A DNA stretch of 63,911 nt, counting the filler, from Cercozoa sp. M6MM (taxonomy: Eukaryota; Protista; Endomyxa: Ascetosporea), in assembly GCA_040357565.1 (NCBI GenBank). It is 12 parts of 12 records of this genome, joined end to end, with 100 filler letters (N's around TTAATTAATTAA, not from the genome) between each part and the next. Parts side by side here need not be neighbours in the genome. Positions count along the whole stretch, not along the records: positions 10,663 to 40,205 come from JBDODJ010000133.1; 11 more parts are not named here. One strand, written 5' to 3'. The position numbers and the translations under genes are program-made. Below the pieces are notes generated by a model, which saw nothing but the letters and a program-made list of their open reading frames with translations, was not told the origin of the DNA and ran no database searches. Below are positions 28,439-40,146 of the stretch, piece by piece; the stretch's first letter is position 1; each line of letters begins with the position of its first letter.

Positions 28439-32809
<4,371 letters not shown>

Positions 32810-33229
32810 CACGACGGTTTTGCGGCTTTCGCCACTCCTTTTGCACGAACGTGTGCGTTGAATTAACTTTGCTTGGGCACTGTCACGCACTAGGAACAGC
32901 TCAAAGTTATTGTGCGAAACAACCGTTACCACGCGATCACCCGGCTGACCCAATCGCCCAACGACTGCAGCGGGTGCAAAAAGTACCCAGGGACATCTTT
33001 CGTTTTCAAGTTCTGATCTGTTTGGACTCCATCCTCGTGTTTTAACAGGTTCTGCCGCAATAGGTGACGGTAAGATTTAAACCCTTTGCGGCAGAACCTG
33101 TTCTTTTAAGCATCCAAATGTTAAATTTAAACCCCCGAGCTAAGATTTATTACTCCGCGCTTAAAATTTAACTTCCGTAATAAACGAACGGAACGACAGC
33201 GTAGGCTATGCGCAATAGTAGTTGTTCTC

Positions 33230-34100
33230 GGAGTCGTACTCGAAAGCTGCAGGTCTTGAATATTCGATTAAGCTGTTTATACCATGGTCTCCCAGTAGAG
33301 ATCAACAGTACCTTCGAAAGGAAAGTTCTCGCCGATCTCTTCTGAGTCTGAGTCTTCATCGTCCGAGTCACTTGTGCTTGAAATTGGTTCCCTATCTTGA
33401 TGGTTTGAACTTACCTGCTGGAGCGGAGGCTGTGGAGCTTCTTGTTGCGGTCGGAAGTCATGCCGTTGGTATCGATACGCACCGGCGCGAGGCGCCTTAG
33501 ACCACTCGGCCACCTGGACATGTACGCAGCTTACAAGCCATTGAATGACTGCATAGCAGCAAAGACACCTGTCTCTGGTTGGCACGTTCGAAGCGAGCCA
33601 TGAATTCGAACGCATCTTCTTCTTCGTCTGTCACTTCATCTAACCTCGGCTCGCTGTCAGTTTGACTGGATACCTCCATTGCACTTTCGCGAGTATGTTC
33701 TTGTCGAATCCGATGCAAACTTGGACGGAGGGGCTCCTCGACGTCGTAGCTCTCCCGAAAGCGTTGTCGTCGTGCGTGCAACTGAGCTTGCGCTTGTCGA
33801 GGAGTTCGGAAAATCGGCCGTTGATGTGACTCGCCTATCGCCGTAGCTTCGTATTCCAGTCCGTTTCTGTCCGTGCTTGTTTCATCAGTATCGTGCTCTT
33901 CTTCGGTGGTCGAACTGTCCTGCGGACTTTCGTCCGAATCCGAGTTGGAAGAACTGTCCGTGTCCGTGCTGCTGCCATCTTCGCTCGAACTGTCGGTGTT
34001 AAGCTCTTCTTCCATTTCTTGGCGCAGCATATCTTCAATCTCGCACGCGAGGTTGTCGATCTCTTGCTCGACTCGTTTCAAGTGCTTTCGCATTCGCACA
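33230..34100 (-). CDS. Uncharacterised acidic/Ser-rich protein
   Basis: A 200-aa open exon plus a second acidic exon after a GT-AG intron. No recognisable domain. Confidence 0.45.
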
Positions 34101-37979: not shown

Positions 37980-40146
37980 TTACGAGGCAGTGTTGAGCTG
38001 TTGTACCAGTCCAGGGTTGAGCGCAGGGTTCGCAAAGCCGGCTCCCTACGAGGAAGCACAGTTCAGATCTAAATTTAATACCTATAAAGAAAAGAGGGGT
38101 CACCAAATCGAACTGCGTCCAGCCAGGTGTCCATCCTGGTGTGTCGAGAGGCACGTTGAAGTTGCCAACTCCTCCCAGCACGGTTCCTCCTGTACCACCG
38201 CCACAGCAACCGCCGGTGCCGGTGTCAAAGGCGTTGTTGTTGCCGACGCCGTAGATTGTTGCCGGCACTGTCACTGCTGGATATCGACCGGCATCCTACA
38301 GGGGGGAATAAATGAGAGGGAGAGGTATAAATGCAGAACAACATGCCAACATTGTCTGGAAGGCTTTCCATGCCAGTTGAACGTCAGCTCTCGATGGGTC
38401 TAGGTAGCCGCCATAGGTACCTACGGGGAGGAGAGGTACCAGGGGTATCGGGAGTGGGGTTGAGGGAAGAAAGACCAACAGGCGGCGGTCGATCAAAGCC
38501 GGTGGCCACCATGACATCACTCAGCTGCGAGGACAGCAGTCCCACCGTGTTGAGCAAGTTCTGCAACTCGGCCGAGTTGTTGTCCTGCGCGTTGTCCTTC
38601 CCGAACAGGCAGCGCAGGATCCAGCGACGAAAGCCATCTGGGGGGGGGGGGGGGCGGAGAGTGAGTACAGGTAGGGGGAGGGTAAGGTGTAAAGGATAAA
38701 GAGAATCCTACTGGCACGTCGATTCTCTTCGTTCTTCTCGTCGCGTGCCTGACCTGTCTGCTGCTTGCGTCGCCAACTCTGCGGGGGAGGGGTAAAGAAG
38801 CGTATTAAGGGGGGAGTCGAAACGCACCTGCACATCCTGTGCGATCTGCATCTGCTGCGCGAACAGTCGCACGTCACGGTCCATCTGAACACACCGAGGG
38901 ATGGGGAGGAGGTGGGTAGTAAGGCTTAAGGGAGTACCTGCAGCGACTGAATCAAGGCCTGTCGTCCAGCACGGTCGAGTCGAATCTGCGCGCCGACTCG
39001 TCCCTGTTCACACACCATCAGCGTGCAATTATACTCCCCTCCCCTATTACCTCCTAGAGACAACGCACATTGCGGTCAAAGCCGAAACCATTGTTGTTGT
39101 GACCGCAGGCTGCGCCCGTGTCAAAGCCGGTGTTGCCACCGTACACCTTCTGCCAGAGCAGCAAGCTTCCGCGCGGACGCCCACAACTACAAGAAAACAC
39201 TAAAGACGAAACTTACGCCCGTGTCGAAGCCGGTGTTGCCGCCGTAGACGTTCTAAACTTACATTTCACATTTTTCGATTTTCTCTCGTCCGCGCGCATG
39301 AAAACAGAAACTTACGCCTGTGTCGAAGCCAGTATTGCCGCCGTAGACGTTCTGTCAAAAACCTCATTTTTCTCTTTCTCCCATGCCCGCGCGGACGATC
39401 GGAGATGCAAAAAGAAACTAAGCGTGTACGCCTGTGTCGAAGCCGGTGTTGCCGTTTCCATAGACGTTCTACCAGAACAGCAATAATTAGTCTTTCTCCC
39501 ACGTCCGCGCGGACGGCAGATACAAAAAAAGGAAACAAATCGAGTACGCCAGTGTCGAAGCCGGTGTTGCCGCCGTACACGTTCTGGGCACAGGGAGGCA
39601 CAAGTAGCCTTCCGCGCGGATGCAGGAAAATACAAGAAAGCATGCTACGCCAGTGTCAAAGCCCGTGTTGCCACCGCACCCGTTCTGCGCGAGAAGCAAG
39701 TGTTTCCCTTGTCCTGTCTTCCGCGCGGATACCCGCAAAATAATAAAGAAGAAAACAACGAACGCCAGTGTCAAAGCCGGTGTTGCCGTTGCTGTAGACG
39801 TTCTGCAAAAGAAAAACAACAACAATTCTTCCGTCCGCGCGGACGCAGGAAAAAAGGAAAAAAACGCTACGCCCGTGTCAAAGCCGGTGTTGCCGCCGTA
39901 CGCATTCTGCCGACACAAAGTGAAATCCCCTTCCGCGCGGACGCGAAAAAGTACCGAAATGCGGCGACATACGCCAATGTCGAAGCCGGGCGTGTTGCCG
40001 TACAGGTTCTGTGTCCCACACGCACGTTAAACGTGCGAAACTGCCTCCGCGCGGATGGCATAGAAATACACAAAAGCACAAAGACAAGAAACGGGGTGAG
40101 AAACTACGCCAGTGTCGAAGCCGGTGTTGGGCTGACTGCCGTAGCC
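37980..40146 (-). CDS. G/N/T/Y-rich repeat protein encoded by a mini-exon array (5'-truncated by contig end)
   Basis: Mini-exons 40108-40146, 39973-40008, 39871-39906, 39764-39802, 39649-39684, 39548-39583, 39430-39468, 39316-39351 and 39217-39252, then exon 39069-39149, all AG/GT-bounded and phase 0. Ordinary exons follow (GRVGAQIRLD.., MDRDVRLFAQQ.., ..VATGFDRPPP, ..NNNAFDTGTGGCCGG..TPGWTPGW). Confidence 0.85.

What the first reader, a model, noticed from the sequence alone, without database searches (positions are those of the whole stretch)
39069..40146. Mini-exon array with a self-complementary CCGCGCGG element in every intron: candidate combinatorial exon-skipping system
Seen: nine 36/39-nt units on the minus strand, each exactly AG/GT-bounded and phase 0. 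In order they encode GYGSQPNTGFDTG, NLYGNTPGFDIG, NAYGGNTGFDTG, NVYSNGNTGFDTG, NGCGGNTGFDTG, NVYGGNTGFDTG, NVYGNGNTGFDTG, NVYGGNTGFDTG and NVYGGNTGFDTG, with a tenth repeat (KVYGGNTGFDTG) opening exon 39069-39149. Variation within the shared NTGFDTG core is mostly at third codon positions, so selection acts on the protein. The nine introns (63-99 nt) are otherwise unalignable, yet eight contain CCGCGCGGA and one contains CCGCGCGCA mid-intron, several extended to TCCGCGCGGA or CGTCCGCGCGGACG palindromes. Inference: the motif is under selection. Because it is self-complementary, any intron could pair with any other and loop out the exons between them, and phase-0 symmetry keeps every product in frame. 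This would be a single-motif analogue of Dscam docking/selector pairing, generating repeat-number or repeat-sequence isoforms. Alternatively it is a protein-bound enhancer for micro-exon definition.
Basis: partly seen in the sequence, partly recalled or inferred. Interest (0 to 1): 0.85.

Follow-up and report, generated by a model that had tools for sequence, protein, structure and literature searches.

The report
Mini-exon array carrying a genome-wide palindrome
A marine amoeba gene built from ten copies of a tiny exon plus a short intron carries the palindrome TCCGCGCGGA in every intron, but this word is about 70 times over-represented across the whole genome, so it is not a device special to this gene.

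Summary
On the minus strand, ten 12-13-residue repeats are encoded by nine 36/39-nt AG/GT-bounded phase-0 mini-exons plus the start of exon 39149-39069. Nine short introns (63-99 nt) separate them. Eight introns carry CCGCGCGG and one carries GCGCGCGG. The organism is Lemnamoeba sinaloensis (Cercozoa sp. M6MM), a rhizarian amoeba with 10-13 introns per gene.

The motif is constrained, but it is not specific to this locus. TCCGCGCGGA occurs 2239 times in the 23.6-Mb genome, against 33 for the reversed control. About three quarters of sites on the largest contig have no second copy within 1.9 kb. It lies in introns of unrelated genes (Aquarius, DHHC, HMG-box), where a roughly 30-nt unit around it is 90-100% identical. 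It also lies in a conserved coding exon, in coding repeats and near one end of a transposon-like repeat.

My best reading: an exon+intron module was duplicated in tandem, and each intron inherited a copy of this genome-wide palindromic element, most likely a site for a dimeric protein. Intron-to-intron pairing is thermodynamically possible. It is untested, because no RNA reads were reachable, and it is unlikely to be why the motif exists.

The parts
40108..40146 (-). mini-exon 1 (39 nt, phase 0), the most divergent repeat
   Evidence: AG before and GT after. The 59 nt of upstream intron up to the contig end (40147-40205) hold no motif.
40009..40107 (-). intron 1 (99 nt) with TCCGCGCGGA; 8-mer at 40047-40054
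39973..40008 (-). mini-exon 2 (36 nt)
39907..39972 (-). intron 2 (66 nt); 8-mer at 39933-39940
39871..39906 (-). mini-exon 3 (36 nt)
39803..39870 (-). intron 3 (68 nt); 14-nt palindrome; 8-mer at 39835-39842
39764..39802 (-). mini-exon 4 (39 nt)
39685..39763 (-). intron 4 (79 nt); 8-mer at 39721-39728. The public gene model retains it, out of frame, near the contig edge.
39649..39684 (-). mini-exon 5 (36 nt)
39584..39648 (-). intron 5 (65 nt); 8-mer at 39612-39619. 29 nt around it are 90% identical to the unit in the Aquarius intron.
39548..39583 (-). mini-exon 6 (36 nt)
39469..39547 (-). intron 6 (79 nt); 14-nt palindrome; 8-mer at 39505-39512
39430..39468 (-). mini-exon 7 (39 nt)
39352..39429 (-). 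intron 7 (78 nt); 8-mer at 39387-39394 (10-mer ends in G instead of A)
39316..39351 (-). mini-exon 8 (36 nt)
39253..39315 (-). intron 8 (63 nt); variant GCGCGCGG at 39290-39297
39217..39252 (-). mini-exon 9 (36 nt)
39150..39216 (-). intron 9 (67 nt); 8-mer at 39169-39176
39069..39149 (-). exon 10: the tenth repeat followed by 15 further residues
37930..39068 (-). rest of the gene: eight more small exons (about 39003-38938, 38884-38828, 38778-38713, 38637-38474, 38418-38344, 38273-38104, 38045-38007, 37950-37933) and the stop codon. Their introns are C/T-rich and lack the motif.
   Evidence: public model MHM6MM_003779

Best explanation
This is the 5'-truncated part of an orphan gene of Lemnamoeba sinaloensis (NCBI model MHM6MM_003779; the contig ends inside the gene). 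It encodes a disordered protein rich in Gly, Asn, Thr, Tyr and Phe. The N-terminal repeat region arose by serial tandem duplication of a module of about 100-135 bp, consisting of one 36/39-nt phase-0 exon plus one short intron. The ancestral intron held one copy of a palindromic element, with core TCCGCGCGGA and symmetric extension ACRT...AYGT. This element is spread over the whole genome in introns, exons, intergenic DNA and other repeats. Every daughter intron inherited a copy. Since then the T-rich flanks have diverged almost to randomness, while the core has been kept by the same genome-wide constraint that keeps thousands of other copies intact. I infer, but have not shown, that the core is read as double-stranded DNA by a dimeric sequence-specific protein. 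The reasons are that the conserved thing is an exact symmetric sequence rather than a pairing pattern, that it has no fixed distance to splice sites, and that it also occurs outside introns. In a genome that is 84% genes and 6% intergenic, such sites must sit largely inside genes. The nine copies then form a dense homotypic cluster in the gene body. Splicing of the mini-exons is most likely ordinary intron-defined and largely constitutive. Any skipping or circular RNA caused by pairing of the palindromes would be a by-product.
For: Exon and intron structure: and the public model. Protein-level selection. Core conserved, flanks near random. Organism and genome architecture (10-13 introns per gene, mean intron 82 nt, 84% genic): PMC11069148, PMC13746701. 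Genome-wide excess: the 10-mer is found 2239 times against 33, the 8-mer 3239 against 556, and 69% of 8-mers carry the T...A flanks. The ratio of perfect copies to the excess of one-mismatch copies is about 1.1 to 1, which implies about 8% divergence in the core although the flanks share nothing. Mostly solitary: 32 of 44 sites on contig 1 have no neighbour within 1.9 kb. Unrelated contexts: the motif lies inside the Aminotran_5 domain of a cysteine desulfurase exon, in coding repeats on contigs 64 and 364, and in an Aquarius intron whose downstream exon aligns to human Aquarius from the predicted acceptor. The same roughly 150-nt multi-copy segment, 82-87% identical, lies in an intron of an unrelated gene. 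The 32-nt unit is 100% identical in an HMG-box gene intron and 90% identical in array intron 5. No extended hairpin: intron z-scores are mostly non-significant and the arm-complementarity test gives z = -1.0. The introns just outside the array (59 nt upstream, all those downstream) lack the motif, as expected if it travelled with the duplicated module.
Against: Retention of a perfect or near-perfect copy in 9 of 9 introns fits a need of each intron (an RNA-level role) better than a redundant DNA site cluster, in which some turnover would be expected. In introns that hold several copies, some copies are degenerate, which points the same way. No binding protein is known. The share of sites in exons, introns and intergenic DNA could not be measured, because ORF-based and composition-based classifiers did not discriminate. 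No transcript data were reachable, so constitutive splicing is assumed, not shown. The flanks may look random partly because T-rich tracts mutate fast by slippage in this microsatellite-rich genome.
Confidence: 0.5

Rival explanations
1. RNA-level intron element. Each of these introns needs its own copy of the palindrome in the pre-mRNA, as a small GC hairpin or as the site of a splicing factor, to be spliced efficiently. The palindrome then marks a class of about 2-3% of the introns of this genome.
For: One well-kept copy in each of nine diverged introns. Degenerate copies occur where an intron has several. Many other copies sit in short introns of unrelated genes: Aquarius, DHHC, HMG-box, an ankyrin-like gene and others. 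5' splice sites in the array are weak beyond GT.
Against: The motif also lies in a conserved coding exon, in coding repeats in a fixed reading frame, in apparently intergenic DNA and near one end of a dispersed repeat. The distance to the 3' splice site ranges from 9 to 49 nt. There is no covariation, only sequence identity. There is no significant hairpin beyond the core. At least 97% of introns do without it.
Confidence: 0.22
2. Selfish or mutationally driven element. The palindrome is the core of a short mobile or self-propagating repeat, comparable to organellar and bacterial palindromic elements. It spreads into tolerant places, mostly introns in this gene-dense genome, and has no function for the host gene.
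For: Near-identical 21-32-nt units lie on different contigs: 57 copies within 3 mismatches against 1 for the control, and three exact 21-mers. A homologous segment of about 150 nt lies inside introns of two unrelated genes whose flanks are not homologous. Tandem arrays with different periods each carry one motif per unit. The motif is present near the common end of a 5'-truncated, retroposon-like family.
Against: Most copies share nothing beyond 10-16 nt. There are no terminal inverted repeats: only one copy of the full 28-nt palindrome exists. The core is far better kept than its flanks, which neutral decay of dead copies does not predict. The exonic copy in the cysteine desulfurase is not an insertion relative to homologues (my reading of the translation). 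The authors of the genome paper found no Introner signal (PMC13746701).
Confidence: 0.15
3. The self-complementary motif lets any intron pair with any other in the pre-mRNA, looping out the exons between them. Phase-0 symmetry keeps all products in frame, giving repeat-number isoforms by design.
For: All mini-exons are phase 0 and symmetric. A fold of the 1.2-kb unspliced RNA pairs motifs 1-9, 2-8 and 3-6 with probabilities near 1, and 4-5 partly. The motif is conserved.
Against: Any G+C-rich palindromes pair in an equilibrium fold, so one search is not evidence of use. The motif is genome-wide and mostly solitary, so selection for it cannot rest on a partner in cis. There is no distinct docking site and no graded selectors. 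The public gene model joins neighbouring exons. No isoform data were reachable.
Confidence: 0.07
4. Hitch-hiking only. The motif is there because the module was duplicated recently, and it has simply not had time to decay.
For: Neighbouring introns still share some similarity.
Against: Synonymous sites of the same modules differ by 28% and the intron flanks are near random, yet 70 of 72 core positions are intact. The word is 68-fold over-represented genome-wide.
Confidence: 0.04

Closest known systems
Genes built by tandem duplication of an exon+intron module (fibrillar collagen 54-bp exons, titin PEVK exons); established knowledge
   Same: Short phase-0 exons each encode one unit of a repeat protein. 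They are separated by introns that descend from one ancestral intron, and skipping any exon stays in frame.
   Different: The exons here are smaller (36/39 nt) and the introns much shorter. Every intron keeps a specific 10-14-nt palindrome that is also a genome-wide word. The protein is an orphan with no known family.
Dscam exon-6 docking site / selector sequence RNA pairing (Graveley 2005); from my own knowledge
   Same: Conserved intronic sequences next to each member of an exon array could base-pair within the pre-mRNA.
   Different: Dscam has one docking site and many different selectors complementary to it, which gives mutually exclusive choice. Here all elements are the same self-complementary word, there is no docking site, the word is not specific to the locus, and no isoforms are documented.
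Complementary intronic repeats (for example inverted Alu pairs) that promote exon skipping and back-splicing to circular RNA; from my own knowledge
   Same: Copies of a dispersed repeat in different introns of one transcript can pair and loop out exons as a by-product. This is the closest analogue of what the palindromes could do here.
   Different: The duplex here would be only 10-14 bp, the element is its own complement, and no circular or skipped RNA has been looked for.
Introner elements (Gozashti et al. 2022, cited in PMC13746701)
   Same: Related sequences recur in introns of many unrelated genes in an intron-rich aquatic protist.
   Different: The shared segment lies inside the intron and does not include the splice sites. 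No terminal inverted repeats or target duplications were seen, and most copies share only 10-16 nt. The genome authors report no Introner signal.
Highly iterated or selfish short palindromes: HIP1 of cyanobacteria (from my own knowledge); palindromic repeats of Volvox organelle genomes (PMC2670323)
   Same: A short G+C-containing palindrome is tens of times over-represented and found in coding and non-coding DNA alike, or filling introns and spacers.
   Different: Those cases are bacterial or organellar. This one is in a nuclear genome with spliceosomal introns. I found no report of it in the two genome papers of this organism.

Membership tests
Tandem exon+intron module array (collagen-like gene architecture) | Repeated exons of equal or near-equal length, all in the same phase, each encoding one protein repeat | tested here: met
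   Nine exons of 36/39 nt plus the start of a tenth, all phase 0
Tandem exon+intron module array (collagen-like gene architecture) | Introns between the repeats descend from one another | tested here: met
   Shared conserved block, similar lengths, and flank similarity slightly above shuffled and higher between neighbours
Tandem exon+intron module array (collagen-like gene architecture) | Exons are joined in the mRNA | tested here: inconclusive
   The public gene model joins exons 5-10 exactly at these sites, but it is a prediction.
Dscam-type docking/selector system | One docking site and several distinct selector sequences complementary to it | tested here: not met
   All nine elements are the same self-complementary word, and no separate docking element exists
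Dscam-type docking/selector system | Alternative (mutually exclusive or combinatorial) use of the array exons in transcripts | not testable with these tools
   No RNA run was reachable. The only holder is a DNA run without joints.
Dscam-type docking/selector system | The pairing elements are specific to the locus | tested here: not met
   2239 genome-wide copies of the 10-mer, mostly solitary
Introner elements | Near-identical sequences that make up whole introns, splice sites included, in many unrelated genes | tested here: not met
   Similarity of 82-87% over about 150 nt between introns of two unrelated genes, but the ends with the splice sites are not homologous. Most copies share only the core.
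Introner elements | Transposon hallmarks (terminal inverted repeats, target-site duplications) | tested here: not met
   The full 28-nt symmetric form occurs once. No duplications were seen at the inspected introns.
Highly iterated palindrome (HIP1-like genome word) | Exact short palindrome over-represented by more than an order of magnitude over composition | tested here: met
   2239 against 33 for the reversed control, and about 28 expected from base composition (my calculation)
Highly iterated palindrome (HIP1-like genome word) | Occurs in coding and non-coding sequence alike, in coding sequence irrespective of frame | tested here: inconclusive
   One exon case is supported by homology, and candidates exist in the other two frames. 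The proportions could not be measured.

The most novel reading that the evidence does not exclude
Lemnamoeba has a nuclear 'highly iterated palindrome'. Where several copies lie in successive introns of one gene, as here, they pair in the nascent RNA and give repeat-number isoforms or circular RNAs of a disordered repeat protein. A dispersed genome-wide element would then have been co-opted as a single-motif exon-shuffling device.
Probability: 0.08. Interest if true: 0.8.

Novelty: new variant of a known kind. Interest (0 to 1): 0.5.

Why it matters
The array itself is a clean but ordinary example of a repeat protein gene grown by duplication of an exon+intron module. What is unusual is the word in its introns. 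A 10-nt palindrome is about 70 times over-represented in a nuclear genome, is kept intact while its surroundings randomise, and recurs as a shared 30-nt unit in introns of unrelated genes. The organism has one of the highest intron densities known for its genome size, and the authors of its genome paper say the origin of its introns is unexplained. Neither genome paper mentions this palindrome. Working out what reads it (a DNA-binding dimer, a splicing factor or a mobile-element enzyme) could bear on how regulation or intron turnover works in a genome with almost no intergenic DNA. RNA-seq data and a chromosome-level assembly already exist, so the question is directly testable.

Tried and rejected
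1. Extended intron hairpins centred on the palindrome. Whole-intron folds give z-scores of -4.1, -1.6, -0.4, -0.6, -1.95, +0.6, -1.9, +1.3 and +0.9. The duplex energy of the two arms against shuffled arms gives z = -1.0 overall. Rejected.

2. Classifying 15 unbiased genome sites as exon or intron. I tried stop-free stretches, spliced-ORF continuity (13/15 sites against 229/255 controls, so no discrimination), a codon model (too weak) and G+C profiles (no dip). None was usable. Only homology settled single cases.

3. A fungal zinc-cluster site (CGG half-sites). There is no Zn_clus match in the genome, and the organism is a rhizarian. AP2 also gave no match. Both family searches rang in none of the control genomes, so they are weak negatives.

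4. A literature search for the 8-mer returned only primers and unrelated sequences.

5. MITE-like terminal inverted repeats. The symmetric 28-mer occurs once.

6. An snRNA or spliced-leader RNA gene as the source of a second repeat family that carries the motif after a U-rich, Sm-like stretch. There is no Rfam match at E up to 1. The copies are longer than 400 nt and 5'-truncated. Rejected.

7. Relatives in metagenomes. The only hits are bacterial FG-GAP repeat proteins that share an eight-residue word by chance.

8. Protein family of the gene. No Pfam match, no Atlas look-alike, a low-confidence disordered model, and a single hit, itself, among 1.84 billion representatives.

9. RNA evidence. 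The organism's RNA-seq run named in PMC13746701 could not be reached.

One script holding typed peptide strings came back unrun, and I redid it from the stored protein file.

Exons were searched by reference, and the public protein P0002 was used instead.
Full report
**What is there**

Read on the minus strand, window 40146-39069 holds nine units of 36 or 39 nt. Each is preceded by AG and followed by GT. Together with the first 36 nt of exon 39149-39069 they encode ten copies of a 12-13-residue repeat ending in N-T-G-F-D-T-G. The nine introns between them are 63-99 nt long. Eight hold CCGCGCGG and intron 8 holds GCGCGCGG. Seven hold the full 10-mer TCCGCGCGGA, and two hold the 14-nt palindrome CGTCCGCGCGGACG. 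The window has nine CCGCGCGG where shuffles give 0.73, and eight of the nine lie in this kilobase. DNA contigs of the source run cover the array colinearly.

**Organism and gene**

A neighbouring DnaJ gene on the same 29,543-nt contig is named 'Cercozoa sp. M6MM' by NCBI. This strain is now described as Lemnamoeba sinaloensis, a marine amoeba of the rhizarian group Apofilosa. Its genome is 23.7-27 Mb with 53% G+C and 8.7-9.7 thousand genes. Genes carry 10-13 introns on average, mean intron length is 82 nt, 84% of the genome is genic and 6% intergenic (PMC11069148; PMC13746701).

A profile-free scan of 1.84 billion representative proteins with the longest downstream exon found one protein, P0002. 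This is NCBI MES1911332.1, 'hypothetical protein MHM6MM_003779, partial'. Mapped back to the window, the model uses exons 39583-39548, 39468-39430, 39351-39316, 39252-39217 and 39149-39069. It continues through eight more small exons to a stop at about 37930. Near the contig edge the model reads exons 2-4 out of frame and retains intron 4. I take that for a prediction artefact at a truncated 5' end.

The protein has no Pfam family and no relatives. Its Atlas model is of low confidence. It is an orphan and probably disordered. The gene's 5' end lies beyond the contig.

**Selection**

In the seven shared codons, third positions differ by 0.283 between repeats and first plus second positions by 0.043. 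Almost all amino-acid differences come from the second exon. The repeat is therefore under purifying selection as protein.

With the introns anchored on the motif, information is confined to the block C-R-T-CCGCGCGG-A-n-G. Upstream there is only T-richness. The flanks align only slightly better than shuffled flanks. The core shows at least two substitutions over ten columns, against at least seven over the seven synonymous columns of the same modules. If rates were equal this would have a probability of about 0.006 (my calculation).

**The motif is a genome-wide word**

- TCCGCGCGGA occurs 2239 times in the 23.6-Mb assembly. Its reversed control occurs 33 times, and about 28 are expected from composition.
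- CCGCGCGG occurs 3239 times against 556, and 69% of the 8-mers carry the T and A flanks.
- Allowing one mismatch gives 5087 against 920. Perfect copies and the excess of one-mismatch copies are therefore about equal, which corresponds to roughly 8% divergence in the core. Yet fifteen unselected copies share nothing beyond a weak R/Y extension.
- On the largest contig, 32 of 44 sites have no second site within 1.9 kb.

Whatever keeps this word cannot depend on a partner in the same transcript.

**Where else it lies**

- *A conserved coding exon.* The motif sits inside the Aminotran_5 domain of a cysteine desulfurase.
- *Coding tandem repeats.* On contigs 64 and 364 it sits in a fixed frame.
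- *Apparently intergenic DNA*.
- *Introns of unrelated genes.* An intron of the Aquarius gene holds three perfect and two degenerate copies in roughly 30-nt T-rich units. The exon after it aligns to human Aquarius residues 452-494 starting at the predicted acceptor, and the next exon matches Aquarius_N_2nd. An intron of an unrelated ankyrin-like gene on another contig is 82-87% identical to it over about 150 nt, while the flanking exons and the splice-site ends are not homologous.
- *A shared short unit.* A 32-nt unit is 100% identical in an intron of an HMG-box gene, 97% identical in a DHHC gene intron that has four copies, and 90% identical over 29 nt in intron 5 of the array. The 21-mer TTCCCACAT-core-ACGT has 57 matches within three mismatches against one for the control.
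- *A second dispersed family.* It is longer than 400 nt, has 5'-truncated copies, and carries the palindrome about 25 nt from its common end.

The array introns are thus members of a genome-wide population of copies, some of which are clearly related by descent.

**What it is not**

- It is not the tip of a conserved long hairpin. Intron folds and an arm-complementarity test are not significant.
- It is not a MITE with inverted ends. The symmetric 28-mer occurs once.
- It is not an Introner in the strict sense. The shared segment lies inside the intron and excludes the splice sites, and the genome authors found no Introner signal.
- It has no fixed distance to the 3' splice site. The range in the inspected introns is 9-49 nt.

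An equilibrium fold of the 1.2-kb unspliced RNA does pair motif 1 with 9, 2 with 8 and 3 with 6, and partly 4 with 5. The pairing is therefore physically possible. But any set of G+C-rich palindromes would do this.

The model also lacks the defining features of a docking/selector system: one docking site, distinct selectors and locus specificity. No transcript data could be reached. I rate a selected exon-skipping device at about 7%. Some incidental skipping or circular RNA, as with paired Alu elements in human introns, is quite possible and worth looking for.

**Best explanation and its limits**

The array grew by tandem duplication of an exon+intron module whose intron already held a copy of the genome-wide element. 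The intron upstream of exon 1 (its last 59 nt) and all downstream introns lack the motif, which fits. This descriptive part I hold at about 85-90%.

For the force that keeps the core, I favour recognition of double-stranded DNA by a dimeric protein. The reasons are the exact symmetric sequence, the absence of covariation, the absence of positional rule, and the occurrence outside introns. In a genome with 6% intergenic DNA such sites must sit inside genes.

The strongest argument against this reading is that all nine introns keep a copy, while redundant copies within single introns decay. That pattern fits a per-intron RNA role, which I rate at about 0.22. A selfish spreading element I rate at about 0.15. 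I could not measure the exon/intron/intergenic split of the sites, which would be the quickest way to decide.

I sent no joined spliced model to any search. 

Noticed in passing
L040-L046 (contigs 13, 17, 16, 8, 36, 28, 6 of the same genome): A dispersed repeat family with at least 10 copies. It is longer than 400 nt, some copies are 5'-truncated, and there is a variable 57-nt insert. All copies share one end about 25 nt past the palindrome, and a U-rich Sm-like stretch followed by GTAAGT lies just before it. There is no Rfam match. It looks like a retroposon-type element or an unknown RNA gene.
   Followed up: partly
L031 749-933 and L035 463-655: Introns of the Aquarius gene and of an unrelated ankyrin-like gene share a segment of about 150 nt made of five roughly 30-nt units (82-87% identity), while their exons and splice-site ends are unrelated. 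This is evidence that intron-internal sequence moves or is copied between genes in a genome reported to lack Introners.
   Followed up: partly
L032 about 805-1010 (contig 25), minus strand: Two predicted 69-nt introns, both in frame and stop-free. One begins with GT as part of GTCCGCGCGGAC and ends just after a second copy of the palindrome, so copies sit at both intron ends. It is not verified by homology.
   Followed up: no
contig 64 at 32713-33386 and contig 364 at 1845-2401 (listing): Coding-looking tandem repeats of 24-27 nt in which the palindrome is read in one frame as x-Arg-Ala-Glu/Asp. There are dozens of copies, so part of the genome-wide count comes from such protein repeats.
   Followed up: no
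window 38640-38654 and introns in L031, L032, L035, L036: Many introns consist of low-complexity repeats. On the coding strand these are C-runs with TTAC (the complement of the TAA[G]n repeat that the genome paper found at contig ends), GTACAT/GTCCAT repeats that resemble reiterated 5' splice sites, and (AACAA)n.
   Followed up: no
window 31700-32110: A long (CA)n/(TG)n microsatellite interrupted by a run of N. This fits the AC:GT microsatellite excess reported for this genome.
   Followed up: no
L033 (metagenome contig Ga0163144_10215259) 1-960: A bacterial FG-GAP/VCBS-type repeat protein contains the same eight-residue word G-N-T-G-F-D-T-G once per repeat of about 63 residues. I take this for coincidence, but it is the only other place the word was found.
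   Followed up: partly
window 39954-40007 and 39649-39801: The 5' part of the public gene model MHM6MM_003779 reads mini-exons 2-4 in a shifted frame, uses a donor 19 nt inside intron 2 and retains intron 4. The deposited protein is therefore wrong for its first 69 or so residues.
   Followed up: yes
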